NCBI RefSeq assembly: GCF_947568905.1
Contig: NC_079166.1
Coordinates: 28,706,001-28,770,000, forward strand
From: Ostrea edulis
Taxonomy: Eukaryota
DNA: 64,000 nt
Direction: 5' to 3'
This document shows positions 15,753-48,934 of the stretch, piece after piece (position 1 is the stretch's first letter; every line of letters starts with the position of its first letter). The notes below the pieces were generated by a model. The model worked only from the letters and a program-made list of their open reading frames with translations, had not been told where the DNA came from and searched no databases. A program made the translations under genes and the position numbers.

Positions 15753-15884
15753 TTTGAGATTTGTTCAATAAAAATCTCGAAGTTTCTTTGTCGTATCGTC
15801 GGTACTCGGTATCGGATATGTGGAGAAGAACATAAAATGTAAAACCGTACCAGAGACGATAAGAATTCCGGATAGATGTACATT

Positions 15885-18568: not shown

Positions 18569-19456
18569 TTGTCTTGTGATGTATGCTTTGTGTGGTGGAG
18601 GTGGAGGGTATTGTCTTGTGATGTATGCTTTGTGTGGTGGAGGTGGAGGATATTGTCTTGTGATGTGTGCTTTGTGTGATGAAGGATGAGGATATTGTCT
18701 TGTGATGTGTACTTGGTGTGGTGGAGGTGGAGGGTATTGTCTTGTGATGTGTGCTTTGTGTGGTGGAGGATGAGGATATTGTCTTGTGATGTGTGCTTGG
18801 TGTGGTGGAGGATGAGGATATTGTCTTGTGATGTGTGCTTGGTGTGGTGGAGGATGAGGATATTGTCTTGTGATGTGTGCTTTGTGTGGTGGAGGATGAG
18901 GATATTGTCTTGTGATGTGTGCTTGGTGTGGTGGAGGATGAGGATATTGTCTTGTGATGTGTGCTTGGTGTGGTGGAGGATGAGGATATTGTCTTGTGAT
19001 GTGTGCTTGGTGTGGTGGAGGTGGAGGATATTGTCTTGTGATGTGTGCTTGGTGTGGTGGAGGTGGAGGATATTGTCTTGTGATGTGTGCTTGGTGTGGT
19101 GGAGGTGGAGGATATTGTCTTGTGATGTGTGCTTTGTGTGGTGGAGGTGGAGGATATTGTCTTGTGATGTGTGCTTTGTGTGGTGGAGGATGAGGATATT
19201 GTCTTGTGATGTGTGCTTTGTGTGGTGGAGGATGAGGATATTGTCTTGTGATGTGTGCTTGGTGTGGTGGAGGTGGAGGATATTGTCTTGTGATGTGTGC
19301 TTTGTGTGGTGGAGGTGGAGGGTATTGTCTTGTGATGTGTGCTTTGTGTGGTGGAGGATGAGGATATTGTCTTGTGATGTGTGCTTTTTGTGGTGGAGGA
19401 TGAGGATATTGTCTTATGATGTGTGCTTTGTGTGGTGGAGGTGGGGGATATTGTCT
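18569..19456. repeat. 42-bp minisatellite, about 21 copies
   Basis: GATATTGTCTTGTGATGTGTGCTT(T/G)GTGTGGTGGAGG(A/T)(T/G)GAG-type units. Confidence 0.97.
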
Positions 19457-21093
19457 TTTTCTCCAGTTTTTTACCCCTCCCCAGAGAGTGCCTGTTCCTG
19501 ATCATGATTGTAAAACTGAGATGTGGTTTTGCTAGTGAGGTTTTTGTTCTTGAAATACGACTTGTTCTTTGTGTTTACATGCTTTGTAAGCTTGTTTGTA
19601 GATTTCACTCAGTTGAAAGTCCCTAAAAGGCTCCTCTGCTGGCTCTCCTGGTTTGTGTGCAGATATCTGTTGGAGCAGGATTTATGGACCTTGAAACTGC
19701 CTTGCAGTTTATCATTGAAATAGATTATGCTGCCACTTTGTGCATTGTCTGGTTGGTGATTTGCAGGTAATGGTTCATTTCATCTTATGCCAGTTGATTT
19801 TTCTGGACAGCGCTGAACAAGAGTGAGAAGTTTGACCAGTCAGCTTTGTTACAAACCCAATACTTTGGTTGTGTTTTTGTTTCTTCGGAGGAAGCAAGGG
19901 AGGGAACGGAGAGGACGGAGAAATGGTAAAGGAGAAATGAAATTAACAGACAGCGAGCAATCTCATAAATCCCACGAAGAATGCAAAATTAAGAATAAAG
20001 CAAGCACGGACGCATGGACACACTAGAGGTGGGATCAGGTGCCTAGTAAGAGTAAGTATCCCCTGACGACTGGTCACACCCACCCTGAGCCCTATATCTT
20101 GATCAAGTATACAAATAAATCAAAATTAGTATATATGCAAAGAACGGTCTAACAATTGTTATGAAATTCTTCAGACAGCATTAATTCAACCTAATGGCAG
20201 GCTGTATTTGCAAATTAGATCATGTACATCTGTAATTGCTACTTATATAAGAGTAGTCCAGGAAACACGCATCATCAGCAATGATATACACTGTACTAAT
20301 GCTTATAAAGCACAAAGCCATGACATATCATACGACTGTGAAAAGGCGTTCAATCAGCTATGTATAACCGCAACACCACCTGTTTATTACCAGGCTATTG
20401 TAACATGACTGCACGGGTAGATATCTGTAGTCAGACAGACAGGGTGAAATTTTAAGTGGAGATAACGAACAGTGATCACCAATCACTACCGTGTATATAT
20501 AGATTGTAACTAGCAGATAATGATCTATTTCTTACCTATAAACATTCGATGGGTATAGAATCGTAGACAAACTCAGTCGCATGCATTTACAATATGTATG
20601 ATAAAGACATGCACCATTACATGTAAGTAAATCTTACATTGTAAGAAATTATCGTCTGCTTTATATTCAATCTATACAGGGTGTACATCCGGGTGCATAA
20701 CTGTGCGTTAACTCAGTAAATTGGCGTGTATTCCAGTCTCATATCGTTTGTTCTAAAGTATTCCTCAAAGTTCTGATTTTCATGATAAGTTTTGGGGCTA
20801 CAGAATCTTGACAGCATTGGTCGCTGCGTGACTCGACTGCCACACCCCTCTGTACAATAAATTCCATACAAACGAAAGAAAGTATTGCAAATATAACTAA
20901 TGTGCAATTGTACATATCATATGTTATATATGCATAGCGAATCAACTAAGTGTAAAAATATACTACAGTATACATAATTTCCTAAATACTTGAGTTTTAA
21001 AAGAAAAGTGACGGATAGAGTAAAGCGTTACATGTACAACCAGGCGCGGGAAGAAATTAAAGGGTGCTCATCACCACATGTCAGCTTTAAGCA

Positions 21094-21105
21094 CACGTGA
21101 CGTCA
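21094..21105 (+). promoter_or_regulatory. Overlapping E-box (CACGTG) and CRE (TGACGTCA) upstream of BHMT copy 1
   Basis: CACGTGACGTCA about 45 bp upstream of the ATG; function untested. Confidence 0.45.
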
Positions 21106-21148
21106 CAGTAGATCACTTAATCTACCGTAACCATTAAAGAGAGGGAAA

Positions 21149-24100
21149 ATGTCAAAGCGAGGTATGTATGTTTCTCACTGAATTCTAGACGATTTTAACG
21201 AATTATCATGGAATTTAAAGTTCAATGGAGTTAAGTGAAATGACACTACTCTAACACATTGAGCACGTGCTATATAGGGCGAATTTCCGGTGTCGTGCGT
21301 CGTTACTTAGGCATTGAATATATACCCATGAGTGATATGTCTGTTATTTATGATAATGGAAATATATGTGAATGACCTTTTTAGAGCTTGCCACGTTCAT
21401 GAAATCAAGCGTTCAATATTCAAATTTTGGGTATGAAATAAACATTAAGTTGAACACACAGGTAAAATTTGGTTACTGGGATGAGGTAAATAACCAGGAC
21501 TTTAGACGTATAAAAGTTTATTTTGTTTGTAGGATTTATTGAGATTAGATATAGTTTCAAGCACTTCATAAGATATTCGTTATCTACATTACGATATGTT
21601 CCCGCACAAACAGATGTGGAGGTACATGTTAATAAAAGTGTTCCTCTGGATCTGCCGGGGAGCAAGGTTAACTGCTGGTTTGTCGACATCAGTTTTCCCA
21701 AACTCACTCCATTCTGCACATTTCTCTTCAAGCCCTGACAATATGCTATAGTGAAGGAAAGTTTGCGGCAGATACCTGTAACTACAGTGTTTTTGATAAC
21801 GTAAAGACAGTTCATAAGAATTGTTTAAAAACACTTAGGAAAGTCAGTGATACTCCGAATAACTATAGTGAAAACATATTGGTATTCTGACTTAGAGAAG
21901 TAAAACTGTGAACATTTAAAACAAATCGTTTTCTAAATAACTACTGCAAATTTTACATCTTTGATATTTACTACTGTGAAAACTTTGCTATATTGTGGTT
22001 CAATAGAGTGAAAAAATGCATTAATCTACTTTATCAAAAATATACATTTATGATACTTTGGCTTACCAATATACAAGAATAGAGGTTTTTATGCTAGGTA
22101 AATGAAACCTCATTTTCCAACTTAAGCATGAATTGAGAATTGAGTCCCCTTCCCGCACTATGGACGCCGCACAACATTAAAGTGTCTGACCTCTTAGACG
22201 TATTTTTTCTAGGACTGGTAGAGAGACTTAATGCCGGGGAAAACGTGCTGATTGCCAATGGATACATGTGGGAGTTTGCCCGCCGGGGATACTTAACCCT
22301 TGGTGGATATGTACCGGAAGTGGTGATCGAACATCCGGAATTGGTAACACAGCTCCACGAGGAGTTTGTTCACGCTGGAACTGACGTGCTACCCGCCTTC
22401 ACTGTACGTCATATTGAGATGATCATGGAACACTGCTACATATCGATGGAATTAAAGAAAAACACATGTGACTCTACACACTGTCTTTCTTTATTTTCAA
22501 GATATGGATTCGTTTTATGCAGAAATATATAGGGCATGTTATGGTTTTATGTTTTCGCAGGATACACATATAGGTATTCTAAGGTCCTTCGATATGCATT
22601 TTTTAAAAACAAGAGGCTCACAGGCCTTATTGATCACCTGAGTATCACTTAAAACTGTTAAAAGTATTTCTATATTCCCAAAGGGTTTGAATTGTGTATT
22701 AATTTTCCTGCTGTGCATATCTACGCTAAATTCTAATATAAAACAAGACTGCTCTTTAGAAGAAAAAAAAACCCCACCCCACACACAAACACACACAGAT
22801 GTCCCCGAAAGCGTCTAGATGCTAATGAAATACTTTACATAATATATGTTATATTTACACTATACATATTTGAGTTTTGGACCCACCCTGGAGTTGCGAA
22901 ATTCACAATATTTGTACATCTTCCTGCTTTTTCTACATATAAAACAATAGTTTTAAACAGTATTAGCAAAATTACAGAAAAAAAAAATCTTTTAGATATC
23001 AAAGAGAATTATTCACTACGACCATTTTGGCCTTCATTTGGTACCAAAACTCCTATTTCTAGGTCATACAATTTTGGTAAATTACCCGCTCCATCATTCA
23101 GTTTCAATTTATTGTTGATAGAATTAAAGATGATGTTATCAAAACGTTTCACTTATAAACAAGATATGCCAAGTTTGGCGCCGCCCTGGAGTCATAATCT
23201 TTATGGCTAATACGTTTTGTTGGTGTTTTCAAATTCAAATGGAAGGGTATTTGAATGTGGGTAAATAGAATGGTGATGATTTTGAAAAAAAATACCATTC
23301 GTCTGCCTCACGTACGTAGTAGGTGCGGTGTTTTTTTTTTTTTATTATTATTATTATTGTTTATGTTTTTCTGCTCAATTAGAAATACCGTATAAATTGT
23401 ATTTCATAGCGATATGTTTCGATCTTTTTCTATTCCATGTTTATTCGTTTTAATAGAATGAACATTCACCGCAGCATTTATCACCCTACCCTCGGAGGCC
23501 ATAGAATTTTCTGTTACTTCACCATTTCTGTTCTTGGTAAAACACGTTAATGTCATCAATAAAAATACTCATCTATCCTTAAGTAATGAAAGTACTGAAT
23601 TATTCTACACGCCATTTTGTACAGTATTTTGGACACCGAGAGAAGATGCGCTCAATTGGTAGAGAGGCGGAAGTTGAGTCCCTAAACAGACAGGCGCTGA
23701 GAATTGCCAGAAAAGTGGCGGATCGCACTGGTTCTCTTGTGGCCGGTGGTGTGTGTCACACCCACGTTTATGCTAAAGATGACCCCGCAACTCACGAGAA
23801 AAGCAGAGCAATATTCAAGGTTCGTTTTGTTTTCGTGAAAATTGCTTATAACTACAGATCAATCATGATGATGCATTAATTCAGAAGAAGATGTTGCCTT
23901 CTTTAACGTATAAAGTATTACTGTCTCTAATATTTCCAGTCCATAGGAGTTTTACCAGCTTTTGATCTCAACATTGATATCACATGCGGGTTTTGATTAA
24001 TCATTGTCACGTAATTCATATTCAAGACACAATTGACAGTAGCCCACGAAGTCAGACTCAAAATTCAAATTGAACTTAGAATTCTAAACTAAGATGTGCA

Positions 24101-30085: not shown

Positions 30086-30650
30086 TCATCATTCATTTCA
30101 AATTTCGAGTCTTCTTACATAGTGCAGAATTATGCTTACAGAAAATCGAAATACAGTCAATTAATGTGGCCCCCTTTCCCTTTAGGACTTCATTTTAACT
30201 AACTAATCTTATGAAAATGCAGGTTCAAATCTTATTGTGGACTTTTCCTGATGATTGATATTGATTTTTAATTTGATATCTAGTAAGTTCGAAGGTTTTT
30301 GGGACGAAAAAACATTTGATAGGTCGCAAATAATTGACCGAAAAGACGAAAAAGTTAGGCTGGTATAAGGTGTATTATGCTTTTGTTATCTTTTCTACAG
30401 AATTTTGTCGTATTTTTCTTCTGTCGTCTTCTCGCCCCGAGGTCATAAAAAGACGACAATAGCACAAACGAAAAACCATACCGAAGCGATCTAATTTTGG
30501 CATTGTTAGACGGAAGAGTTCGGTAAAATATACAGGTCAATCGTATGTGCCACCTTGCTTATATCTCAATTTCTATATGTCACGAGCTTATTGTGCGTGT
30601 ACGCACATTTCTTTCTCGGATCCATCGTCTGAAGAGGAAATTTACGCAAC

Positions 30651-33600
30651 ATGCCAAAGCGGGGTATGTATCGTATTCTTTAAATGCTGGATACTAGAAA
30701 TTTGGACGTTAGACTAGAGACTGTAGTGCAGATGGTGGAAAGAAAGTAGTGCTTGTTAAATTCATTTATTAAGTTCTTTCATAAAAACCACAAACCTATG
30801 AACAGCCGATTGAAACTCTTATATTAATATCTATATATTTCATTTGGTTCAATCAAGGTAAGTTAAGATTTGATGCTAGCAATCCCTTTACAGACGTAGA
30901 TAGACGTCTAGACTGAATTTCTGATTCCTTACACCCATATGTGTGCTAGATAATGAGGGTGATTTAAACATTTTATTTCGAAATTTCAATTTTTCAAATA
31001 AAATCACATTCAGTATTTGGTTTTTAAAGCAGTATGAAAGTAGGTTGGTGTGACACGCATACATATGTCACCTAACCTTGATCTGTTTTATTTTTACGAT
31101 CTACACACAGATAGTGGAAATTCGTGGCATTCGTTCCTGCATGTGTGATAGATATATAAGAGTTTGTGAAACTATGCACACGCATGAATCTATCCGCTAT
31201 GCAATACAACTAAGTTATATTATCTCTAAACACAATCCTTTTTATATGATAGTTCGCCGTGTCTTTCCAAACACCATATTACAGGGGTGTGATTTTTCCT
31301 CTAATTTGCTCAATTTTCGAAAAAATGAAACACTCTGGATTCGATCTAAAGTGGCAGAAAAAGATATTTTTCCAGGTAGGGTGAGATGTTTTCCTCCCTT
31401 TCTGACCAGTTTTCCTCTGATTTCTGAGGAATTCAGTCACATCCCTGATATTAACATGGTATTAAGGACAATCTCAAAATTTTGTAGAGAAGTGACGTGA
31501 TTGAAATTGGCATATAGGAATCTGAGACATGATGGTTCCTGTCTGGTTTAGCAAGTGTAATGATGTTACTCCACGAAGTTCGAAATTGGTCGTATGTAAG
31601 GAGATGACTATTGTATGAGAAGTTTGGAAGGAGATGTTTGAGCATGATGTGTGCAATTTTGTCCCCTTCAAGTACAGTTCTTTGTGCGATTCCATTCATG
31701 GTAAGATGTAGGTTGAGTGGGCCTGTGTGTTTATGTTTAACTTTGTGTTTGAAGCGGCCCTTGACTAGTATATGTACTTCTGAATCAAAACTTTTATTAC
31801 AACTAGCTAGAGTGTGTTCACTTGTTCCTCGGTACGGATGTGACCTTTCTCCAGACAGTGCATGCGTTTGTGTGTGAATATTGAATTGAGAGTGAGTTTA
31901 TGTTCTGGATATATGACTTGTTTTCTGTCTTTGCATGCCTTGTTACCCAGATGGAAGTCCCTAAAGACTCCTATGCTTGCATTGTGTGCTTTTATTTGTT
32001 CAAACAGGATTTATGGACCTCGTGGCTGTTTTTAAGAATATCATGGACATATAATGCATTGTCTTCTGGGGAATTGCCTGATTGATGTTTTCCGGGTATT
32101 ACATGTAGACTGTCTTCAAGTAGAGAACCCTGAGCAACAGTGCAAATTCGGAACTGTCGGTTTTGTTGCAAATCCATGACCTTGGTAATTCTTTTATCCC
32201 AGAGAGGAGAATGGTTTAGTCTAACCCACACATAAAGACGATTATCATAGTGATTGATTTAATGACACTGTCTAAAGCTTTGGTAACTCCTGTGTTGAAG
32301 CCAGTCCTAGTTGGGGATTAATAATTTAGTATTACCAGGCTTAGATCATCTACTCGTATAACTTTGTCCATTTGTTACAGACCAGAATGGTAGGTGTTTT
32401 GGCAGCAGTAAAAACCGACTATTGTTGCTTGTAGGTATTTATATGATATGGATTTTGAAAGGATCTCATTTGAAGATGATTTGCATATTTAGAGCTTGAT
32501 TTGAACCTAGGCCACGGTCAAATTTCACTAAAGCAAATATGTTTGAAATAAAAATTTGCAAGTTCACTGGATTCTCGATGTAGTTTGTTTTGTTGTATAA
32601 TGTCCGTGGTATGTTCTTAGCCTGAAAAATTGAAAGGTCATGACCCCTTTTCTGGTGTCCCATCAAAAATCAAGATATCTAATTCACATAACTGTTTGAC
32701 AAAATCTGAATCAGCCACTTTAATCTGCTTGTAGCGGGAAGTACGTTATATCCTCCGAACTCCGTCCTCCGTACTCGGGGATCTACCTCTTTTCAGCTGG
32801 CTGTTGGTGAAGTGTCTGTGTAATGCATTTTGTTTTCATTGAAGCCTTTTGCTTGTGTGGTGTGCTAGTGTGTTGGCTTTTATCGTGTTCATTAGCATTG
32901 TTGATGACTTTTGTGTCTTAGTGGTTTTTGTTGGACCTGTCTGCGTAATTTGATTAGGTCCCCCAACACGATTGGAAGATAATTCAAATGTTCTCAGTAG
33001 AAGAATCCTTAGTCCTTAGTCAAAATCAGCGTGGAAAAAACCCGGCATAACAATCGGTATGAATCACGTCAGACAGTATTTGACCAAATGACATGTTGTA
33101 TTGGTAAACTAGATAATTATGGCGACCACATAAGTAGGGAAATGTTGACTTTAAACGAGACTGTTTAAGCCCTTGTAACATCAACATATTTTCTGTAGCT
33201 TGTTTTGATTTTAAATTGATTATCTGCAGAACATGCTCTCTAGTATGGATTCAGTTGAGAGATGTATACACCATATATAGATTATAATGGAATGTTGCTA
33301 CATAAATATGGAAAGTTGACGATGTCTTTTATTTCGAATTCACTGGGATATACCGGTATCGAATCGAAATACATGTATATATGAAAATGAATATTGTTGA
33401 TAACTAAAACGTTGTCGATAAATCTAAATGTGGAGTTGAAGGCAATACCAAGATATTATTTCTTCTCTAGTAGGAGCTTTGGAATAAATTCTTCCTCATT
33501 AACAGGTCAGCCAATAATGGAGCACAATTCGTTCCTGTAAATTCCAAGAGAAACTCTGATCGCTCAGTAGACACTGTCAATGAGGAATTCCAGCATCGTT

Positions 33601-36600: not shown

Positions 36601-39600
36601 GGAAATGATTGCGGTGGTTTTAATATCCCTATGTTCGCGGTCGGGGATTTCCCCGCGAAATTAAAACAACCGCAAATATTATGCAAGTGTGACACACTAT
36701 GTTTTGAACAGTTACCAGTAATCCGAATTGAGTTGAATTCCGCGAAAATAAAACTACCGCAATCAGACCAATATGAAAAAACCGAGTCTTTTAGTACCGC
36801 GAAATTAAAAACACTTACAGTATGCATGATGTCATATGATTTCCAGATTGTTCTTGAAATACACCACTCATATATGTAACTAAAACAGAATGAAAATGGG
36901 ATCAAGAATAGACAATTACAGAGAGTGTGATCTTTTTCACTAGTACCCCGAAACTTTATTGATCTTTACAAGTTGAATTTACATTACTTGATTGTTTAAA
37001 GAACCCATTTTATGCCAATATTTGTGGAAAAGGTACGTAGTCAGATTTCGAAATGAAATTTTTATGATGCCGTAGTAGACGATATTAAAAACATTTCTGT
37101 TAATGCAAGGTGAAGATAACGAACAGTGATCAATCTCATAACTCCTATAAGCAATACAAAATAGATAGTTGGGCAAACACGGACCCCTGGACACACCAGA
37201 GGTGGGACCAGGTGCCTAGGAGGAGTAAGCATCCCCTGTTGACCGGTCACACCCGCGGTGAGCCCTACATCCTGATAGCATTACTAGATATTAGACACAA
37301 TTGTCATTAAACACAGTCATTACATGTAGTAAGTTATCACTCTTCGAATTCCTATTCACGATTAGACTATTCCTCCACCTGTCACACCAGTCACGGGGCC
37401 TAAGTGGTTAGAGGTTCACTTCGTGACCGGAAGTAAGGTTTTGGGTTCCATTTTAACTGGATTCAATTACTTACATTGTTGCACTATTGTTCCACACAGG
37501 AGGTGATAGAGTGGGCGGTGGAGGAGGGAGCAGACTACATTGTGGGGGAGACTTTCTCCATTTTTGGGGAGGCCATGCTAGCTCTGGATTGTATCAAGGA
37601 GTACGGGAATGGTAAGGGTAAAATTATTACAGACGATATCATGGTAATGGTAGGGAAGCATCCGTGTGGAATATTTCAAGCATTTAAGGAAACGAAAAGG
37701 GATCAAACTAGTACTGTACTGATATAGGTAGAATAACAGCAGAAAGTATTCAAACACTGTTCTAAATATACCAGAACAATTCGGCGGAGTTCATAAATAA
37801 GTGTTGGGAAAGGTAAATGAAAATACCTGTGTAGCCTATCAAACATTTCGGAAAGGATCTACAGAAAAACAGAACCGATTGTATAACACATTATGAAAAA
37901 ATTGAGGGGGAACTCATTTTAAAGTATACCAATATCATACTGTAACGGGATTGATTGACTGTGTATTGTTTAACGTCCCTCTCGAGAATTTTTCATTCAT
38001 ATGGAAACGTCATCATTCCCAGTGAAGGGTTGTAAAATTTAGACCTATGCTCAGCGCTCACGGCCTTTGAGCAGGGAGGGATCTTTATCATGTCACACCT
38101 GTTGTGACATGGGCCTAAGCTTTTTCAGTCTCGTCCAAAGGACTGTCCCATTTAGTCGCCTCTTACGACAAGCAAGGGGTACTGAGGACCTATTCTAAAC
38201 CGCATTCGCGTAAACAATGCGTGATGGATTTCGGAGAAATATCAGAGCATACCAAACAGTAAAGGAATGGTAAGGAAAAGCAAGGGGAGTGATTGTGGGA
38301 TGTTTCAGATTGGGTGAGAGAGACAGAAAGAAATATCTTAGGTTTTCTACAACAACACGAAAAACAAGATACGAAATGTATATACTTTATCTATTAGATG
38401 GAGGATGAAGATAACGATCAGTGATCAATCTCATAAATCCCACAAGCAATACAAAATAGATTGTTGGACGAACATGGACTCCTGGTCGCACCAGAGGTGG
38501 GATCAGGTGTCTAGGAGGAGTGATTTCAAATGCCCTTTGATTATATAAATTCGTTGTTATCGGAATTCTGCTTTAATCTGAACTGTAGATAATATGAATT
38601 GCACTTTCTCATTTCTTTCTTGGTCTGATAATATAGTACAAAACAAAACGCATAATAATCGAGAATATCAAAAGGGAAATTCTTTCATACTGTGATCGCG
38701 AATATCAAACGTGATATCTTTATACATTGTAACCACGAATATAAAATTTTTAAATTCACACGAATATCAACAATAAAATTCTTAGTACTCGTTATGAGAA
38801 CAAGTAAGGATAGGTAATTGCAAGGATAATTTGAACATACAAATTCTTTTACATTGTAATTGCGATATCAAACGTGAAATTGTCACATATGGTAATCACG
38901 AAATTCTCACGAATATGTAACGTGAACGCAATATTAAATCCAGGTATCCCTGCTGTTATTACTTTGACTGCTCATATACCGGATAAGACAGTGGATGATG
39001 TCCCTTTACCGGAAGCTTGTCGCCGACTAGAGGAAGCGGGAGCGGTAGCTGTCGGACTCAACTGCTCCAGAGGTCCCAAAACTATGATCCCACTAATACG
39101 AGAGATCAGGAAAGCTTGCAAGGTTTGAATTGTGTTTCTAGTGTTTTTGTGTCCTTGTTGATGTTTGCCACTCCCATGAATCAATAACAGAAACGGAGTA
39201 CTATTATAGCACTGATTCAGCAATTCCAATATTTATACATTGAACATAAAGATATTTTAGGGTCCTATCGCTGCCATTCCTGTACCGTTTCGTTGTCAAG
39301 ACGACTGCCGCACGTTCTACTCTTTCAAGGATGACGAGACTGGTAAGAATTGGATACTCCATGATAATATAGGCCTATAAGGAATCCATCAATGATTCTC
39401 AGAAATATTTTTAAATCAGCAATTCCTATCTTTGCATTTTAGAGAAGTTTCTGTACCCGAACAATATTGAATGCAAAAAATGTTCATCAGACGACATTAT
39501 AGAATTTGCAACAGAGGCCAAAGAAATTGGTGTACAGTACATAGGCCTTTGTTGCGGAAACTGCTCAGCTTACATGCGTGATTTAGCGGAAGTCTACGGC

Positions 39601-39726
39601 CGAAAACCAGGGGCTAGTCGTTATTCGTGTGATCTGTCACTGTCATTGTTCTGGGGAAAGAAGAAAGTGTTGAATAAATCATGGGATAAAGAGTTGATGT
39701 ACATGGTGAATGGCACAGAGAAGTAA
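30651..39726 (+). CDS. BHMT: BHMT-like, copy 2 (351 aa, 7 exons)
   Basis: Exons 30651-30663, 33821-34011, 35774-35968, 37500-37611, 38944-39122, 39261-39342, 39443-39726. Same exon sizes and phases as copy 1, no stops or frameshifts, ends ...NGTEK-TAA. Confidence 0.93.
31350..32100 (-). mobile_element. Degenerate LINE (I/Jockey/Nimb-like) endonuclease-RT fragments
   Basis: GDKIAHIMLKHL...SW.NII.LAKP.......Y.PISITSLL.K is the RT N-terminus; a homologous piece also lies at ~19460-19780. Confidence 0.6.
33010..33620 (-). mobile_element. Penelope-like RT remnant in intron 1 of BHMT copy 2
   Basis: Reverse complement contains ATGCTGGAATTCCTCATTGAC and 3' sequence shared with the other PLE copies. 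Confidence 0.55.
34829..35097 (-). mobile_element. Full-length SINE with 12-bp TSD
   Basis: TSD TTGAAAAGTGAT (34817-34828, 35098-35109); (CAAT)n tail; inserted in a tandem of PLE terminal repeats. Confidence 0.9.
36591..36820. mobile_element. Tc1/mariner-type MITE
   Basis: TA-CTGTAA...TTACAG-TA with repeated internal CCGCGAAA motifs. Confidence 0.65.
37110..37275 (-). mobile_element. Penelope-like terminal repeat copy
   Basis: GTGAAGATAACGAACAGTGATCAATCTCATAA...GGTCACACCCG; similar copies near 20030, 35110, 38400, 40150, 45050, 45490, 46240, 49200 and 51040. Confidence 0.7.
37950..38205 (-). mobile_element. SINE copy
   Basis: Same head, core and tail as 34829-35097. Confidence 0.8.
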
Positions 39727-40039
39727 AGAATCTCATTCCACATCAGGAATTAAGTCTAGAAAGACTTTCTACACAGGACCATCTCTAAAGTTTCACATGT
39801 ACTTCACTGCCGTATGTTATCGCATGGGTTTTTGTACATGTACAGTTTCAGAATTTCATCAATTGATAAATATTCCAAAAGTACACAATCTGTTTTTTTT
39901 TTTAAATATAGAAAAAGTACTATCAAGGGATAAACTTTTTGAGGGAAAATAAATAAATGTACAAACTCATACTTAGCTTGATAAAGTATATTGTATATAG
40001 TTGGTATGTAATTAAGATCTTCACTCGTACTAATCTTGT

Positions 40040-40800
40040 GACCAGTCATCCCAAAAATTGCTCTTAATACTACTCTGATTCTACGCACAAGCACTCTGAA
40101 GATGATATAAAAATATGCTGGAGTTCCTCATTGACAAAATCTACGTTGTGAAAGGTGACGATAACGAACAGTGATCAATCTCAAAACTTCCATAAGCAAT
40201 ACAAAATATATAGTTGGGCAAACACGGACCCATGGACACACCAGAGGTGTTTTAGTAGTCTTTAGTAGTCAGGTTTTCGAACCGTCTGTTGAAATTCCCA
40301 TGGGCACGAATTATGCTCCTTTGCTAGCTGACTTCTTTTTATTTCTAACGAGGCAGAATTTATTTAAAAGCTTAATATTATGCTGTGACCTTCAATTCGA
40401 CCGTTAGATATATTGACGACATTTTATCTATCAATCATGCTCATTTTGATATGTTGTTTCGGTATATCCCAAACGACTCGAAATAAAAGACCCATCCATA
40501 TTGGCTTCATACCTGGATATTTTAATGAACATAAACGTTAGCGGCAAACTAACAACTCATCTTTATGACAAACGGGATGACTTCAGATTCTCCATCGTCA
40601 ACTTTCCATATTTATGTGGCAATATTCCATTATCACCTGTATATCATGCCTCTGAACTGATTTGATATACTCAAGGGCATGTTCTGTGTATGGTCAGTTT
40701 TTAAATCGAGTCAGGATAATTACAAATAAGCTGATATTATAGAAGTTTTAACTGTCTTCATTAAAGTCAGCATTTTTCAAACTATATGGTCGTTATTTAC
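40040..40800 (+). mobile_element. Penelope-like RT fragment downstream of BHMT copy 2
   Basis: VEIPMGTNYAPLLADFFL, YIDD (TATATTGACGAC), LYDKRDDFRFSIVNFPYLC; an inverted terminal repeat is inserted at ~40150-40250. Confidence 0.75.
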
Positions 40801-41827
40801 CTAAAAGTTAACAAATTGTGACCCTAAATTACATGTAAATGTAATCTTTACATACTAGTGCTGGTGCACAAAATATGCTCTGAACAGGTACCACATTCTT
40901 GCTTTCATTTCCTTCCATTTGGTCTAATCTGCACCACATCCACACCATCACAATACGAAGTGAAGGAATTTAAACACTGCACAATCAAGAGTCCTGTCTG
41001 CCCTTCTTAAAAAAATTACCTTCAACTGGGGCTATCCACCTTCCCTCTCAGCTACAGACCTTTTGCTGAACTATGCATGTTTTCATCAAAATTTCTTCAT
41101 AAATTGACCACGTGTCTTATTTTCGTATTTGCACCCATCTATGTGCTAAGAATCACGATGACACTTACATATTGCATACCAACTTATGTATTAAGCACCC
41201 AGCTACATTAGACATGTATCCTAAATCATTGTATACAATACTATATCACTTCAAATATGGGGTATTTTCATTTTAAATAAAGTTAATCGGGCCTATGGTG
41301 CGAAACTGTCTCCTCCTACTTCAGGTACAATAGGGATTTTCAGCACTCAATCTGAAGCTACATTCTGATAATGAATTAGTTTATTTCCATCAAAGAAAAT
41401 GTTTGGAGAACAAATTGGTTTTGTGTTGCATGTCCACGTTTTGGCGCAAAGTGCCATATTAACATCATCTATCATTTACATTCTTAAGGCTGCATTGGGT
41501 CCATATAATATAATAGCGGTTTGGCGTCCAAATAGAAGACAGCAAGAAAGTTCTGTCGCCATAAGTTAAAGGTTGCTTTAGTCGTCCTTTTCCCTCAATT
41601 TTGTCATATTTTCCATGTTGTCTACCTTCCCAAATCACGACAAGACGACAAAATCACAGACGAGCTACCATACTGAAGCGAAGTAATTTCGGCACTAATA
41701 TAGGTCAGTCATATGTGTCCATCTTGTTTATATATCATTGTTTGTTTATCACGAGCTTAATGTGCGTGTACACACCTATTTTTTATTTTTACTCAGGTTC
41801 ATCTTTTGAACAGGAAAGTTACGCAAC

Positions 41828-44800
41828 ATGCCAAAGCGGGGTATGTATACTATTCTTTTAATGCTGGATACTGCATGATATAATTTAGACTTAAATTAAA
41901 AGCTAAGGTGCAGACGATATGGATTAAAGTAATAATTGTTAAATTCATTCCGTAAGTTCGCTAACCCATGGAAAGCCGTTGATGAAGTTTAAATCAATCT
42001 CTCTATTTTTTTTTTCAATGTTGGTAGGCCAAGATTAGTTGTTATCCGAACTTAACATATAATGTAGGCATATCGAAAACATTACATCAAAGCAATTCTT
42101 GTACATCTAACGCTAGAGTTCTGTTATTGAACTCCATACATGAAACATTTCGTATTGTGTAGTCCCTACTGTGTATTGGATGTCATGGGGGATAGGAACA
42201 CCAAACATTTTCTTTTATCCACATGTATTGTCAATGAACTTACAACAACTGATTATCAATCTATGTCTTCTAATTGTGATATGCTCATTTCCAATTCAAA
42301 TTATTAAATTAGCAAAAGACTATTACAAATAAATCGTTATGGTTCTATTATGATTCCTGGTGAATTCAGCACCTTGACAGTATGTGCATTCTGCATACAA
42401 ATGTTGTGAAAAACAATATGAAAGTAGGTCGATGTCTGTGAACTGTGAGTGAACTGCGAGTTCTTGTAAAGTCATTGACCCCAGATATTTACTCTGTATG
42501 CTATTATTTAATCTGTATCCACTGTTGACTCCTATGATATCATTTGATCTTCATGGAACAACATTTCACGTATGTGCAAACTGTCGTTTTACCCTAGAAA
42601 TTGACAGCAGGTCGTCTTATATTTCTGTCTTAGATCGATGACTCAAATAATTTTATCCAACGTTTTAAAGGGATTGGTTCACGATTTTTGATAAAAATAT
42701 TTTTCATTTTTGATGTTAAACATTGAAAATATTACTCATTTAATGTTGACAGCCGAACTTTTGACCTTCTGAATGCAAGAATAAAAACAATATTTTAGAC
42801 TTAAATCTGTGTTATGTAAACAAAGACTCGAGTCTTTTTATGTAAACAAACAAACAAGTGAAATATTGATTTTGTAATATAAAGCATCTTGATTTTGCAT
42901 AGTCAAATTTTAAAGTTTTAGATGACACATTTCACTCCAAAAATGCTTGAAATTTGAAAGATATAATAAACTTAGATCGATATTCATTTCTTTTGGAAAA
43001 AATCGTAAACAATAACAAACCGCAATCTTTGTTTAAAAAACAAATAATAAACTCTCTAAAGTCAGATTCTGTGATAATGTATAACCTTAATTTTTATGTG
43101 AAATCTTTTAAATACAGTAGACAGTAGATTTTGATCATTAAAAGTAAACAAGTTCTTCATTAATATTTGTTGGAAGAAACATTTAACCTGTGCAAAACCA
43201 ATAACTCGGCAAGTAGGTTAATTACATGTAAGGATGAATAAAACACCAGGTACAACAGTTATAGATTGACAGTACATAACATGATATTTTCGAACGTTAA
43301 AACTTCAAAACATGGGGAAATATCTTTTTTAGACAGTCATGTAAAATTTTAAAACCTTACGAGATTCGAATTCACGATTTACAAATCTTTATCTCTTTCA
43401 TACTAAATCATTCAGTTAATCGACTATAACATATATTTTTTTTTTAGATTTTAAAGGACAAAGAATATATATGTATTACCGATATTCATTTTTCTGTCTG
43501 TGATTTGAAAAGATATGATACTCTTCCATATCGTAACAAAATAATGGAGACACAGTCAGTGAAGTGAAAATTGAAGAATGTTTCACCTTCTGTTTTGACG
43601 TTTGTTTCTTGTGTGTTTGAATCATACCACTTGGTGATGTCGATATTAGTTTTAGTTTGCTTATAACATACCCACTATCCAAAACGTAGGTACATAGTTA
43701 CTGAAAAACTACATACAAATATACATTGTCGTTCTCCAGGGAAGCGGGCTGGGACCTTTCTCATCCACGTCCCCATTCCACATACACAAGTAAGATAATA
43801 TGAAAAATCTGACATAAGTCTCATCTCTTGGAGTATATAACCTGAGACCCCATCCATGTATCAAACTTAGAGTATTCTGGGAAAATAAACTTAACGTTGT
43901 CTGTTTAACGATACTATACATATTTACAGGACTGATAGAAAGGCTTAATGCCGGGGAAAACGTGCTGATTGCCAATGGATACATGTGGGAGTTCGCTCGC
44001 CGGGGGTACCTAGCTCTTGGCGGATATGTACCGGAAGTGGTGATCGAACATCCGAAATTGGTAACACAGCTTCACGAGGAGTTTGTTCACGCCGGAACTG
44101 ACGTACTGCCCGCCTTCACTGTGAGTTGTGTTCAGTCTTTACTCTTAGTTACCTCACCAAATATCAATTCCAAAACTTCACCATACCTATATATACAAAT
44201 GCACTAATGCTTTTAACAGTATTTGATGTTGCTCTACACAATAACCAGGTTTTTAACTGAATGTAAACAGTATTCTGTTTGACATTCTCTATTCACTATG
44301 GGAATATACCCTTTGATGTATAATACACTTTCAAAGATATGACAATTACCTATACATTCAGCCTGAGGATTCCTTTGAAATATAGCCTTTTCTGTACCAT
44401 TTGATATTTATGCATGGGATACATGCCAAAATCAAAAGTTGTTTAATTCGTGAATACAAATTATTTATTTCTCTTTATCCTTACCTTGGCATTAGCACCA
44501 GTCATTCTAAAAAAAATATAAGCATTACTTTGTCATTTCTAAACAAAATATTGACACATGTACATTTAGAACACAAGAATGATCAGAAGCATAACCTTTG
44601 AAGTATTGTGTTGTAAAATTTATTTATTCGTATTCAAGTCAGTATGAAATTCAAAACCTTTGTACAGTATTTTGGACACAGAGAGAAGATGCGTTCGATT
44701 GGTAGAGAGGCTGAAGTTGAAGACTTAAACAGACAGGCTCTGAAAATTGCCAGAAAAGTGGCGGATCGAACCGGTAGTCTTATGGCTGGGGGCGTGAGTC

Positions 44801-47800
44801 ATACTCAAATTTACTCTGCAGATGACCCAGCAACACACGATAAATGCAGAGCAATATTCAAGGTATAGCATATGTTCCTAGAGATGTACTGATTCATTTT
44901 ACTAATTTAAGAATTTCATCTAGAATAAATTTGCTTGATAAAAATTATGTCAGTATTTCGCAAATTCTATTGTCGTTATAGCGATCTAATTTACAAATAT
45001 AACCTGTCATTTTGTTAAATGCTGTCTGACGTGTTCATACAAATTGTTAGGCCGTTCATTACACATCAAGATATAGGGCTCACGGCGGGTGTGACCGGTC
45101 GACAGGGGACGCTTACTCCTCCTAAGCACCTGATCCTATCATCTCTGGTAAAGTGTATGTCCAGTATCCACGTTTGCCTTACTCTTAATTTTGTATTGTT
45201 TGTAGGAGCTATAAGATTGATCACTGTTCGTTATCTTCACCTTTTCATTGCTCAATACATTGATAAAGTAATCAGATGGTTGTGTGAGTGATTGATAATA
45301 GGTAGATTCCATTCATTTCAAGACTATTGAAATAAACGTTACATAGCCATGCCTGCAATTTGCAGACGATACAATTCAATTAGTGGTTTAGATTTTATGC
45401 AGGGATTAGCATTCCCTAATGTATAGGGTATTGTATCCAAATAATTAATGCACTCATGGCAAAAAAAAAAATAATAACAACTCTGTATTCAGTGATAAAT
45501 CTCATAAATCCAATAAGCAATAGAAAATAGAGAGTTGGGAGAACACGGACTCCTGGATATATCAGAGGTGGGAACGGTTGCCCAAGAGGACTAAGCATCC
45601 CCTGTCGACGGTCACGTCCGTGGTGAGCTCTGTATCTTGATCAGGTGAATGGATTTATCCGTAGTCAAAATCAGTGCGCCAAGAACGGCCTAACAATCTA
45701 TATCAAACACATTAGACAGTATTTGACCCAATGATTGATTATATTGACCAATTATATTATTATAACGACCATAGAATTTGCAGTATGCTGACTTTAAACA
45801 AAACTGTTGAAACCTTAAACTATTACCCTTGGAATGGTTACGTCATCACCTACTATCGTATATTCATATGGGTTCTGTTTTTATCTTTGTTTGCAAAGGA
45901 ATACTTATTGACGTATAATTTTGTATTTCATTGTTATTCCTCCACAGGAGATGATTGGATGGGCGGTAGAAGAAGGGGTGGACTACATAATGGGGGAGAC
46001 TTTCTCCATATTAGGGGAGGCGATGCTGGCTCTGGAGTGCATCAAAGAGTACGGAAAAGGTAAGGACATATACCTTAACAACATACCTTAACAGGATAAC
46101 AAAACAGTACAATAAAGGCAAAGACTTACCTTTACAGGATATAGAAACTCTACGATGAAAGGTAAGATTATACAATGACAGGATATCAAAACAGTACAGG
46201 AAAAGTAAGGAATACCTTTGATGATATCACATAGTTATGAGATTGATCACTGTTCGTTATCTTCACCTTGCATTGGTAAGAGGGAGATAAAGGTATACCT
46301 TTATATGATATCAAAACAGTGCGTGGAAGGTTAGAGCCTACCTTTAGTGGATATTACAGGAAACATAAAGGGACATCTCAAAGTGAGTGAATGAGTGTCA
46401 AACAATACTGAGGAGATAAAGGCAAAAGATGCGCCACACATAACGGGAGAAGAAAAGAGTTGAATTGCTGTGGATGATATCAATAGGTAACTGGTAAAGG
46501 AAGATCACCATAGAGTGGAGCGTCATATCACAAACTGTATCTTATGTTTTTCTTCAAATTTATATAAAGGTCAGGAAAGTCCACTGTAGGGTAAATATCA
46601 TCATGTTTTCTACTGATCACCTCTCAGTAGAAACAAATTACAAAACAAATGTAGGCATCTCGCATATGATATTCATTTTCACTTACAATGTGGCCAAATC
46701 ACAAATATAACAAATATTTTCGTATAGAGGGTTTATTCCATGGGTCTAAAATTTGGCACTTTGCTGGTTCAAAGGTATGCTAATAATTTTAGCGGAATAA
46801 ATTTTGTCGGACAGGGATGGAGTTTTTTCTCTTTCAAATACTGAAGTTGCAATAGGATGCATTTTTGGCGGGTGGAATTTTGGCGGCAAGCTATCTAACC
46901 GCTAAAATAAGCCAAAATTATAATCCCACGAAAAAAGAGCGCTATACGGTATATAGTTACATATAGTTCTAGTATTACTCCTCCTAGGCACCTAATATTA
47001 CTTCATAGGTTAATATGATATTGTCCATTAGTTTCAATTCACTCTGAGTATAATATTCAGTCTACAATATGTACATATGTACATTTGAATAGTTAAAATA
47101 TTTATCTAGCCTGCATTAATCGTATTTTCTGGTCAATCCCTTCATATTTCCTGTAACAAAATCTTCCAACTTTATCTTATATCGGTTACACATAAATTGG
47201 GCTTTTAAAATGTCCTTATGCACAAATCAAAAGTGAAATCCCTGCTCATTACACCACAGGTCTCCCCGCTGTGATCACGCTGTGTGCCCACGTCCCAGAT
47301 CAGACGCTGGATGAAGTTCCAATACCGGAAGCTTGTCGCCGACTGGAGGAAGCTGGGGCGGTAGTGGTCGGACTCAACTGCTCCAGAGGTCCCAAGACAA
47401 TGATTCCACTGATACGAGAGATCAGGAAAGCTTGCAAGGTTTGAATAGTAATTGTATCATGTTCTTTGTTCCTTGAATATTCTAACTCTATGACTAGACG
47501 TGTTATTTGGATGTAACACTGTAACAGTAGCCTATATCTCTTTTCGTTCAAAAGATGGCATATGGATATATAAAAAAAGGATACTTTTCCTAGTAGAGGT
47601 TCATTTTCAAAATATAAGGAAAAGAAACCGTTCACCTCATTTATGTATGTTTCAGGGCCCCATCGCCGCCATACCTGTACCGTTCCGTTGTCATGACGAC
47701 TGCTGCACATACTTTTCCTTTAAGGACAGCGAAACAGGTACGAAGATAAATTTTACACAGAATGGCCATTACTTTGGCATTCATATAATTTACATCATGC

Positions 47801-48129
47801 TTCTTTTTTCTTCAGATAAGCTTCTTTTTCCAAACAATCTTGAATGCAAAAAATGTTCCTCAGACGATATCAGAGAATTTGCAACAGAAGCAAAAGAAAT
47901 TGGAGTGCAGTATATAGGTCTTTGTTGCGGGAACTGCTCAGCTTACATGCGTGATCTAGCGGAAGTCTACGGCCGACATCCAGAGGCTAGTCGTTATTCG
48001 TGTGATCTATCGTTGTCGTTTGTTTGGGGAAAGAAGAAAGAGTTGAATAAATCTGGGGATAAAGAGTTTATGTACATGGTGTATGGAACAGATATTTTGT
48101 ACCCTACTGTTATAAATGTTCCCCAGTAG
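41828..48129 (+). CDS. BHMT: BHMT-like, copy 3 (361 aa, 7 exons)
   Basis: Exons 41828-41840, 43930-44120, 44668-44862, 45948-46059, 47260-47438, 47656-47737, 47816-48129. Intact frame, GLNC and GLCCG retained, extended C-terminus [14 protein letters not shown]. Confidence 0.93.
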
Positions 48130-48934
48130 TAGTTTGAATTTCAGAATTTCATGGATTTATAAATATTTTAAAAGTGACTTATCTTAAGTTTTATACCTAG
48201 TGACATGGTCATGGAATAAACATTTCAGAATATATTGAAAAAAACAACAACACTGTGTTGAGGAATGATATGGAAATTGTACTTATATTATGGAACGCCG
48301 TCATAGAATGTAAAACTTATACGGTACCAATTTTGATGCAACAGCTGAGGATTTCGACAAATAATATCTCTTCAGTGATGCTTAACCGAATTTTGGAAAT
48401 CCGAAATAACAACATACTTGTTAGAGCTATTTTAGGGAAAATCAGAGTGCGAAAAAGTGGAGACAAATTCGTCGAAGGATAAGAGCTATTCATGAGGGAG
48501 AGCATCCTTAATTTTGAAATGAATTTCTATATTTTATCACAGTAATTAAATATACATCCGTATTTTCAAGCTAGTATAACGAAGTATTAGCTACTGGGCT
48601 GTACAGACCCTCGGGACTAATAGTCCACCAGCAGAGGCCTTGACCCAGGGGTGATAATGTAAAACTTATACGGTACCAATTTTGATGCACCAGATGCGCA
48701 TTTCGACAAATGAATGTGTAACGGTCTGTAATGATATTAATCGATAAAGGTAACAATTACGTAGACAAGAAATTGGATATTATGTGTGATATATTTCAGC
48801 AGTGTTTCAGTGATTGTAGTCTTAGCTTCATGACTTCGTCATGGGTTCAAGCTCATCTCGTACATGTACCTTGGCCTTGTCAACGAGTGCGATGTTTTAA
48901 ATGGCAGCTAAAAATAATACAATACTTCAACTTT

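What the first reader, a model, noticed from the sequence alone, without database searches (positions are those of the whole stretch)
30330..39726. Middle BHMT copy looks like an anti-Lepore chimera: promoter and exon 1 of copy 3, body of copy 1
Copies 2 and 3 share upstream DNA, exon 1 (TTACGCAACATGCCAAAGCGGG|GTATGTA) and the start of intron 1 (~30330-30830 vs ~41520-41990); copy 1 has a different upstream region and MSKRG. From the end of intron 1 onward, copy 2 instead matches copy 1 in intron flanks (GTGTCTGACC..TTAGACGTATT..TTCTAG; CACTATTGTTCCACACAG) and in protein (GGVCHTHVY vs copy 3 GGVSHTQIY). The 1-2 and 2-3 spacers are also homologous. The pattern A, B/A, B is what unequal crossover in intron 1 (between ~31050 and ~33700) would produce, placing enzyme A under promoter B.
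Basis: partly seen in the sequence, partly recalled or inferred. Interest (0 to 1): 0.75.

Follow-up and report, generated by a model that had tools for sequence, protein, structure and literature searches.

The report
Chimeric middle BHMT-like gene in oyster
In the flat oyster Ostrea edulis, the middle of three tandem BHMT-like methyltransferase genes really is a hybrid, with the promoter and first exon of the downstream gene joined to the body of the upstream gene; this is a clean but ordinary product of a partial tandem duplication.

Summary
The window is Ostrea edulis. It holds three intact tandem BHMT-like genes (351, 351 and 361 aa, PF02574) identical to three RefSeq proteins. Saccostrea has one copy at the same place, next to CHORDC1.

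Exons 2-7 give ((copy1,copy2),copy3) with 100% support. A copy2+copy3 grouping is rejected (AU p=0.004). dS is 0.22 for copies 1-2 and about 0.6 for either against copy 3.

A single-copy 5' block of about 520 bp (30351-30880: promoter, exon 1, first ~220 bp of intron 1) aligns only with copy 3 (41547-42045). Its 72% identity matches the 71% of copy 1-2 introns. One tandem duplication of about 11.4 kb, running from the body of gene A into intron 1 of gene B, explains both.

A single-copy block from 1.4-1.7 kb upstream of copy 1 (19460-19860) reappears inside copy 2's intron 1 (31806-32150, K2P 0.33). So the left breakpoint was probably upstream of gene A, not in its intron 1. The new copy then lost its own first exon.

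The homologous "spacer" is largely a high-copy transposon. Copy 2 has gained 16 amino-acid changes against 3 in copy 1. No RNA data were available, so the hybrid transcript is not shown. This is a new member of a known kind, of modest interest.

The parts
877..15757 (-). CHORDC1-like gene (context). It is the same upstream neighbour as the single BHMT-like gene of Saccostrea echinata and S. cucullata.
   Evidence: Colinear exon matches to L001 and L003, whose called genes carry PF04968/PF04969.
18569..19457 (.). 42-bp GT-rich minisatellite (21 copies). It abuts the left end of the upstream block of copy 1.
   Evidence: Tandem Repeats Finder.
19460..19860 (+). Upstream block of copy 1, 1.3-1.7 kb before its ATG. 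It is homologous to 31806-32150 inside copy 2's intron 1.
   Evidence: BLAST E 1e-13 and 2e-7, colinear. Alignment. Core 19529-19769 has K2P 0.33.
21149..28478 (+). Copy 1 (gene A), 351 aa, starting MSKRG. Exons: 21149-21161, 22213-22403, 23625-23819, 25270-25381, 27666-27844, 28015-28096, 28195-28478.
   Evidence: Gene model. Identical to P0047 / XP_048767093.2. PF02574 at E 8e-38.
28853..29466 (+). Transposon copy D1 in the spacer between copies 1 and 2.
   Evidence: Matches 40252-40796, 48912-49223 and, inverted, 33010-33551 at roughly equal distances (K2P 0.27-0.36). The family is high-copy by read depth.
30351..30880 (+). B-type 5' block of copy 2: about 300 bp of promoter/5'UTR, exon 1 (30651-30663, MPKRG) and the first ~217 bp of intron 1.
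   Evidence: Aligns only with 41547-42045. K2P 0.34-0.37. Single-copy depth.
30881..31805 (+). Junction interval of the duplication. It has no homologue in the window and contains a ~100-bp high-copy repeat near 31327-31422.
   Evidence: No BLAST hits. Depth peak in bin 31300-31499.
31806..32150 (+). A-upstream-type block inside copy 2's intron 1, homologous to 19460-19860.
   Evidence: Lies on single-copy contigs 31425-32525, 31425-32712 and 31423-32240 at baseline depth in three runs. No terminal inverted repeats.
33010..33551 (-). Inverted high-copy transposon (D family with an R1-like end). It sits where copy 2's own A-type promoter and exon 1 would be expected.
   Evidence: BLAST to 29466-28950 and 49223-48912. 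Depth 7e4-1.9e5 against a baseline of 32. No exon-1-like motif anywhere else in the window.
33702..39726 (+). A-type part of copy 2: the last ~120 bp of intron 1 and exons 2-7 (33821-34011, 35774-35968, 37500-37611, 38944-39122, 39261-39342, 39443-39726).
   Evidence: Exon identity to copy 1 is 91-96%, against 78-90% to copy 3. Intron flanks are alignable only with copy 1. ML tree and AU test. Protein identical to P0049 / XP_056016374.1.
40252..40796 (+). Transposon copy D2 in the spacer between copies 2 and 3.
41547..42045 (+). B-type 5' block of copy 3: promoter, exon 1 (41828-41840) and the start of intron 1.
41828..48129 (+). Copy 3 (gene B), 361 aa. Exons: 41828-41840, 43930-44120, 44668-44862, 45948-46059, 47260-47438, 47656-47737, 47816-48129. 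The C-terminus is 10 aa longer than in the other copies and in Saccostrea.
   Evidence: Identical to P0050 / XP_056016375.1.

Best explanation
Ostrea edulis has three tandem genes for BHMT-like homocysteine S-methyltransferases where Saccostrea has one.

A first duplication (dS about 0.6) gave gene A (now copy 1, next to CHORDC1) and gene B (now copy 3). Later (dS about 0.22, non-coding K2P about 0.35) one tandem duplication copied a segment of about 11.4 kb. That segment ran from about 1.6 kb upstream of A, through A and the spacer, to about 220 bp into intron 1 of B.

The result is A; then a detached B promoter plus exon 1; then a second A gene; then B. The second A gene has since lost its own promoter-proximal region and exon 1, and a high-copy transposon now lies there. 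Its exons 2-7 are now preceded only by the B-type promoter and exon 1, across a 3.16-kb composite intron.

The middle gene is therefore a chimera with a B 5' end and an A body. Exon 1 encodes only M-P-K-R-G(phase 1), so the protein is essentially an A-type enzyme, and what changed is its cis-regulatory context.

Shown: the homology pattern, the equal divergences, the intact ORF and purifying selection. Inferred: the order of events, the position of the left breakpoint, the loss of the A-type exon 1, and use of the B-type exon 1 in mRNA.
For: - Exons 2-7: ((c1,c2),c3) with 100% support. The alternative topologies are rejected at AU p=0.004. dS is 0.22 (c1-c2), 0.60 (c1-c3) and 0.63 (c2-c3), and 1.3-1.7 against Saccostrea.
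- The 5' block aligns only between c2 and c3 and is single-copy DNA.
- Equal age of all three partitions. Pooled identity is 71.0% over 1523 intron sites (c1-c2) and 72.0% over 475 sites of the 5' block (c2-c3). The upstream-A block has K2P 0.33. Introns of c1 or c2 against c3 are at random level (K2P about 0.9-1.0).
- Colinear offsets of 11.2-12.3 kb run from 19460 to 30880 against 31806 to 42045.
- The order in copy 2 is B exon 1, then the A-upstream block, then the A-type end of intron 1, then exon 2. Only a duplication whose left end lay upstream of A predicts this order.
- Calibration: the two Saccostrea orthologues at dS 0.41 already have an upstream K2P of 0.65. Constraint therefore cannot keep the c2 and c3 promoters at K2P 0.34 across dS 0.63.
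- Exon 1: Ser2 (TCx) is shared by copy 1 and both Saccostrea species, while Pro2 (CCA) is a derived state shared by copies 2 and 3.
- Function is retained. All ORFs and splice sites are intact and pairwise dN/dS is 0.10-0.13 among the three copies. Exon 1 plus donor is 21/21 identical between c2 and c3 in a background that is 28% diverged (chance about 0.001).
- The assembly is supported. Contigs of three individuals tile 30300-33072 and 33323-33942 with 0-14 mismatches each.
Against: - No RNA run was found. Splicing of 30663 to 33821 and use of the B-type promoter are not demonstrated here. They rest on the RefSeq model and on sequence conservation.
- The left-breakpoint inference rests on one homology island of about 240-400 bp. 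An old, low-copy mobile element, with copies less than 90% alike and so invisible to the depth test, cannot be excluded.
- No relic of an A-type exon 1 is detectable in copy 2's intron 1.
- The 926 bp at the junction match nothing.
- No outgroup closer than Saccostrea was available. Saccostrea promoters are too diverged to say which promoter type is ancestral.
- Much of the spacer similarity is transposon sequence.
Confidence: 0.78

Rival explanations
1. A reciprocal unequal crossover between misaligned paralogues A and B, at homologous positions inside intron 1, made a seamless hybrid intron (true anti-Lepore). The 19460-19860 / 31806-32150 similarity would then be an unrelated old repeat.
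For: It gives the same A, B/A, B pattern and the same equal divergences. No A-type exon 1 relic is found in copy 2's intron 1. The B-type and A-type homologies both lie inside intron 1.
Against: The upstream-A block lies in copy 2's intron 1. It is colinear, of the same age (K2P 0.33), single-copy by depth and without transposon hallmarks. At the time of the event, A and B introns were already strongly diverged: they are at random level now, while 1-2 introns are 71% identical. That would have been a poor substrate for homologous crossover.
Confidence: 0.15
2. No chimera. Copy 2 arose as a whole-gene duplicate of copy 1. Copies 2 and 3 simply retain the ancestral promoter and exon 1 region under selection, and copy 1 replaced its 5' region.
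For: Copy 1's upstream region is not alignable to anything. Outgroup promoters cannot be polarised.
Against: - c2-c3 similarity is uniform over about 520 bp, including 217 bp of intron, and ends abruptly on both sides.
- Its K2P (0.34-0.37) equals that of the c1-c2 duplication, not that of A-B.
- Saccostrea orthologues show that this promoter evolves fast (K2P 0.65 at dS 0.41).
- Copy 1 keeps the ancestral Ser2 and the ancestral position next to CHORDC1.
- It does not explain the upstream-A block inside copy 2's intron 1.
Confidence: 0.04
3. Ectopic gene conversion. After a whole-gene duplication of A, a tract of about 520 bp from copy 3's 5' end overwrote that of copy 2.
For: The tract length is typical of conversion. 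The block has sharp boundaries.
Against: - It needs homology between 5' regions that were already unalignable.
- It needs the conversion to coincide in time with the duplication (equal K2P).
- It predicts the upstream-A block upstream of copy 2's exon 1, but the block lies downstream of it.
Confidence: 0.03

Closest known systems
Haemoglobin anti-Lepore (beta-delta hybrid flanked by normal delta and beta genes), the reciprocal of Hb Lepore, produced by unequal crossover (Hb Lepore defined in PMC5434260; the anti-Lepore arrangement is from general knowledge)
   Same: A tandem array of upstream paralogue, hybrid and downstream paralogue. The hybrid carries the 5' end of the downstream gene and the 3' part of the upstream gene, and both parental genes are kept.
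   Different: In the oyster the join is in non-coding DNA, so only five N-terminal residues and the promoter are swapped. The breakpoints appear not to be at homologous positions (upstream of A vs intron 1 of B). The event is old and the structure was seen in all three individuals examined for the copy-2 region, not as a rare clinical allele.
Chimeric genes created by tandem duplications that do not respect gene boundaries, as catalogued in Drosophila yakuba and D. simulans (PMC4069613, PMC5460883)
   Same: A tandem duplication with ends in or near two neighbouring genes joins the promoter and 5' exon of one to the body of the other. It is expected to change expression rather than the protein.
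   Different: Here the two partners are paralogues of one family, so the chimera is a full-length normal enzyme. It has persisted to dS 0.22 under purifying selection. Expression data are lacking.
Vertebrate BHMT (rat 1UMY, human 1LT7)
   Same: The homocysteine-binding (PF02574) barrel aligns over residues 3-311 at E 1e-43. The three zinc-ligand cysteines are in place (GLNC, GLCCG).
   Different: The oyster proteins are 351-361 aa and lack the ~90-residue C-terminal extension of vertebrate BHMT. The methyl donor is unknown.

Membership tests
Homocysteine S-methyltransferase / BHMT family (Pfam PF02574) | Homocysteine-binding S-methyl_trans domain | tested here: met
   PF02574 at E 8e-38, covering profile positions 25-282 of 283. 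Best solved relatives are rat and human BHMT at E 1e-43.
Homocysteine S-methyltransferase / BHMT family (Pfam PF02574) | Three zinc-ligand cysteines (human BHMT C217, C299, C300) | tested here: met
   In the alignment to 1UMY, GVNC pairs with GLNC and GGCCG with GLCCG. All three copies keep them.
Homocysteine S-methyltransferase / BHMT family (Pfam PF02574) | C-terminal oligomerisation extension of vertebrate BHMT (about residues 320-406) | tested here: not met
   The proteins end at 351-361 aa. The alignment to the 407-aa rat enzyme stops at residue 316.
Homocysteine S-methyltransferase / BHMT family (Pfam PF02574) | Betaine-dependent methylation of homocysteine | not testable with these tools
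   Needs an enzyme assay.
Anti-Lepore-type hybrid gene (unequal crossover between tandem paralogues) | Array of upstream parent, hybrid and downstream parent, with both parents intact | tested here: met
   Three intact genes. Trees and homology pattern.
Anti-Lepore-type hybrid gene (unequal crossover between tandem paralogues) | Hybrid has the 5' end of the downstream parent and the 3' part of the upstream parent, made in one event | tested here: met
   The 5' block aligns only c2-c3 and the body groups c1-c2. Divergences are equal at 72% and 71% identity.
Anti-Lepore-type hybrid gene (unequal crossover between tandem paralogues) | Breakpoints at homologous positions of the two paralogues (homologous crossover, seamless hybrid) | tested here: inconclusive
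   An upstream-A block lies inside the hybrid intron and is single-copy. This argues against homologous positions, but it is a single island. The junction interval 30881-31805 matches nothing.
Anti-Lepore-type hybrid gene (unequal crossover between tandem paralogues) | A reciprocal (Lepore, one fused gene) or ancestral two-copy chromosome exists in the population or in relatives | not tested
   Only the region 30300-36299 was laid on three individuals. No closer Ostrea genome was available.
Chimeric gene from partial tandem duplication | The chimeric mRNA is transcribed and spliced as predicted | not testable with these tools
   No RNA run holds the stretch. There is only indirect support: exon 1 plus donor is 21/21 identical to copy 3's in a background that is 28% diverged.

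The most novel reading that the evidence does not exclude
The promoter swap was followed by functional divergence. The chimeric copy 2, now driven by a B-type promoter (possibly alongside a residual A-type promoter inside its intron 1), has a new expression domain. Its roughly fivefold excess of amino-acid substitutions over copy 1, at an equal synonymous rate, would then reflect adaptation rather than mere relaxation. The array would be a natural experiment separating regulatory from coding divergence in oyster methyl-donor and osmolyte metabolism.
Probability: 0.2. Interest if true: 0.5.

Novelty: new member of a known kind. Interest (0 to 1): 0.35.

Why it matters
This is a well-resolved, old example of a promoter/first-exon swap between tandem paralogues, made by one segmental duplication, in a non-model mollusc. 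All three genes are intact in the assembly, and the copy-2 5' region was seen in all three individuals examined.

The three genes offer matched contrasts. Copies 1 and 2 have almost the same enzyme under different promoters. Copies 2 and 3 have the same promoter type driving different enzymes. These contrasts could be used to separate cis-regulatory from coding effects in BHMT-like genes. These genes are candidates for a role in methionine, betaine and osmolyte metabolism in oysters.

It does not reveal a new kind of mechanism. No paper in the searchable library describes this array.

Tried and rejected
The read-laying run was therefore used for DNA, to check assembly support and repeat depth.
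- Relic of an A-type exon 1 in copy 2's intron 1: the pattern search with 3 mismatches found only the three known first exons. Sensitive BLAST of 19000-22212 against 30664-33820 found only the 19529-19769 block, a transposon piece and the end of intron 1.
- Polarising the promoters with Saccostrea: local alignments of 200 bp upstream were not significant for any Ostrea-Saccostrea pair (p 0.08-0.44). An apparent shared 'GTGTACACA...TATAT' motif in the MAFFT alignment was rejected as chance.
- Transposon hallmarks of the 19460-19860 and 31806-32150 blocks: no terminal inverted repeats and no Rfam family in 15-51 kb.
- The 42-bp minisatellite has no colinear counterpart in copy 2.
- Gene conversion in exon 2: the A-B dS is low there (0.32-0.42), but exon 2 is also slow against Saccostrea. 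No convincing tract was found.
- A fourth copy or gene fragments: none in the window.
- A closer outgroup: the 90% cluster holds only O. edulis (3), S. echinata (1) and S. cucullata (2). A JGI metagenome contig (L002) carries exons 5-7 of another oyster, equidistant from all three copies and lacking the 5' end.
- In one search the copy 1 protein was typed in as letters. All later calls used stored ids.
Full report
**What the window is.** The three gene models built by hand are all on the + strand, with seven coding exons each and GT-AG at every intron. They translate to 351, 351 and 361 aa. These are identical to three RefSeq proteins of Ostrea edulis: XP_048767093.2, XP_056016374.1 and XP_056016375.1. 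The proteins carry the homocysteine S-methyltransferase domain PF02574. Their closest solved relatives are rat and human BHMT (E 1e-43), with the three zinc-ligand cysteines conserved. They lack the C-terminal extension of vertebrate BHMT.

Upstream, on the minus strand, lies a CHORDC1-like gene (877-15757). In Saccostrea echinata (L001) and S. cucullata (L003) the same CHORD gene is followed by a single BHMT-like gene. There are no further copies within 10 kb. The window holds exactly three copies and no fragments.

**The observation.** Exon 1 encodes only M-x-K-R-G in phase 1.
- Copies 2 and 3 have ATGCCAAAGCGGG|GTATGTAT at 30651 and 41828.
- Copy 1 has ATGTCAAAGCGAG|GTATGTAT at 21149.
- Copies 2 and 3 align from about 30351/41547 to about 30880/42045. 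Identity is 55-80% per 40-column window of the alignment and falls abruptly to background at both ends.
- Copy 1 shows no significant similarity there. The local score is 9-11 against a null mean of 9.6, while c2-c3 score 67.
- From 33702 onward copy 2 aligns with copy 1 in intron flanks and in the 3' region. Copy 3 matches either of them only in exons, plus a weak (65%) ~160-bp stretch just after the stop codon of copy 1.
- In exons 2-7, copies 1 and 2 are 91-96% identical, against 72-92% for either compared with copy 3.

DNA contigs of three individuals from three studies cover the 5' block and most of copy 2's intron 1 at baseline depth with few differences. The block is therefore single-copy DNA, not a shared transposon, and the assembly is supported. 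The exception is about 250 bp inside a transposon that no unique contig bridges.

**Phylogeny and dating.** With both Saccostrea genes as outgroup, exons 2-7 give ((c1,c2),c3) with 100% ultrafast bootstrap. The topologies (c2,c3) and (c1,c3) are rejected at AU p=0.004.

| Pair | dS (NG86) |
|---|---|
| c1-c2 | 0.22 |
| c1-c3 | 0.60 |
| c2-c3 | 0.63 |
| any copy vs S. echinata | 1.3-1.7 |

Both duplications are therefore younger than the Ostrea-Saccostrea split.

The non-coding distances are the key quantitative result.
- The eight intron blocks alignable between copies 1 and 2 pool to 71.0% identity over 1523 sites.
- The two halves of the c2-c3 5' block pool to 72.0% over 475 sites.
- Introns of copy 1 or 2 against copy 3 align at random level (K2P about 0.9-1.0).

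One event of one age thus accounts for both the A-type body and the B-type 5' end of copy 2. In exon 1, Ser2 is shared by copy 1 and both Saccostrea species, and Pro2 is a derived state shared by copies 2 and 3.

**Rivals to a chimera.** Could copies 2 and 3 simply have kept an ancestral promoter that copy 1 lost? The two Saccostrea orthologues differ by dS 0.41. Their 290 bp upstream are already at K2P 0.65, with many gaps. This promoter is therefore not conserved enough to stay at K2P 0.34 across dS 0.63. The c2-c3 similarity also covers 217 bp of intron uniformly. The outgroup promoters themselves are too diverged to say which type is ancestral.

Gene conversion of a 520-bp tract would need homology between regions that are unalignable. 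It would also need to coincide in time with the duplication. Both rivals also fail on the next point.

**Where the left breakpoint was.** A segment 1.3-1.7 kb upstream of copy 1's ATG (19460-19860) is homologous to 31806-32150, which lies inside copy 2's intron 1.
- Three colinear BLAST pieces support it, the best with E 1e-13.
- The core has K2P 0.33, the same age as the duplication.
- It lies on single-copy contigs at baseline depth in all three individuals.
- It has no terminal inverted repeats.
- It has only these two copies in the window.

The order in copy 2 is B-type exon 1, then the upstream-A block, then the A-type end of intron 1, then exon 2. That is what a tandem duplication of 19460-30880 predicts, giving 31806-42045 with offsets of 11.2-12.3 kb. 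Its left end is upstream of gene A and its right end is in intron 1 of gene B.

Under this reading the new A copy originally had its own promoter and exon 1. Where they should be there is now an inverted copy of a very high-copy transposon (33010-33551, depth 10^4-10^5 against about 30). No exon-1-like motif survives.

I rate it clearly lower. The junction itself lies somewhere in 30881-31805, which matches nothing in the window.

**Correction on the spacers.** The long 'spacer homology' (28853-29466 vs 40252-40796) belongs to the same transposon family. That family is also present downstream of copy 3 and, inverted, in copy 2's intron 1. All copies are about equidistant (K2P 0.27-0.36). It is therefore weak evidence. 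Two short colinear blocks and the constant offset still support continuity of the duplicated segment through the spacer.

**State of the chimeric gene.**
- The ORF and all splice sites are intact.
- Pairwise dN/dS is 0.10-0.13 among the three copies.
- Exon 1 plus donor is 21/21 identical to copy 3's in a background that is 28% diverged (chance about 0.001). This suggests the exon is used.
- Polarised by copy 3 and Saccostrea, exons 2-7 of copy 2 have accumulated 16 non-synonymous and 23 synonymous changes since the duplication. Copy 1 has 3 and 18 (the exon 1 site is excluded because its history differs).
- The ML branch lengths are 0.058 for copy 2 and 0.016 for copy 1.
- The chimera is thus under relaxed, or partly adaptive, but still purifying selection.

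No RNA run was found, so transcription from the B-type promoter and the 30663-to-33821 splice are inferred, not shown.

**Comparison and verdict.** The arrangement has the topology of haemoglobin anti-Lepore (Hb Lepore defined in PMC5434260). It is more accurately a chimeric gene made by a tandem duplication that did not respect gene boundaries, a class well documented in Drosophila (PMC4069613, PMC5460883). No paper in the searchable library mentions this oyster array.

The finding is real and the chimera interpretation is right. The proposed mechanism needs amending. The phenomenon is a new member of a known kind, of modest interest. It would become more interesting if expression data showed that copy 2 follows copy 3.

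Noticed in passing
window 25687-27137: A 20-bp minisatellite (about 73 copies, 90% matches) fills intron 4 of copy 1. Copy 2 has the homologous flanks (37612-37937 and 38518-38943) but no array, so it expanded after the duplication or was lost from copy 2.
   Followed up: partly
window 18569-19457: A 42-bp GT-rich minisatellite (21 copies, 95% matches) ends 2-3 bp before the left edge of the upstream block that is duplicated into copy 2's intron 1. It could mark the duplication breakpoint.
   Followed up: partly
window 34700-35299, also 24259-24406, 38067-38196, 29540-29797(-), 15908-16005(-): A SINE-like family and an adjacent short element (R1, about 12 pieces in 64 kb, matching in both orientations) are extremely abundant. 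Summed contig depth is about 10^6 against a baseline of about 30. The same SINE sits in intron 5 of a BHMT-like gene on a JGI metagenome contig from another oyster (L002:575-794).
   Followed up: partly
window 48090-48129: Copy 3 has lost the ancestral stop. The other copies and Saccostrea end ...YG(K/T)EK*, while copy 3 reads on for 10 more residues ([14 protein letters not shown]) into what is 3' UTR in copy 1 (28514-28551 is 89% identical to 48092-48129).
   Followed up: partly
window 21094-21105: Copy 1's proximal promoter has an overlapping E-box/CRE palindrome, CACGTGACGTCA, about 50 bp before the ATG. Copies 2 and 3 instead share TCACGAGCTTA(A/T)TGTGCGTGTAC at 30580-30602 and 41749-41771. 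These are different candidate regulatory inputs for the A-type and B-type promoters.
   Followed up: no
window 47494-48126: In copy 3, intron 6 (47738-47815, 78 bp) is stop-free and in frame, so exons 6 and 7 lie in one 211-codon open frame. Retention of this intron would insert 26 residues rather than truncate the protein.
   Followed up: no
exons 2-7 of copy 2 (33821-39726): Protein evolution after the duplication is asymmetric: 16 amino-acid changes on copy 2 against 3 on copy 1, at equal synonymous counts (23 vs 18). Five of the 16 cluster in the last 26 residues (F326L, V327F, G338W, F342L, Y347N).
   Followed up: partly
L003 and the contig of P0048 (Saccostrea cucullata): S. cucullata has two 98% identical proteins of this family on different contigs (650 kb and 49 kb). 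They are probably haplotigs rather than paralogues, but this was not checked.
   Followed up: no
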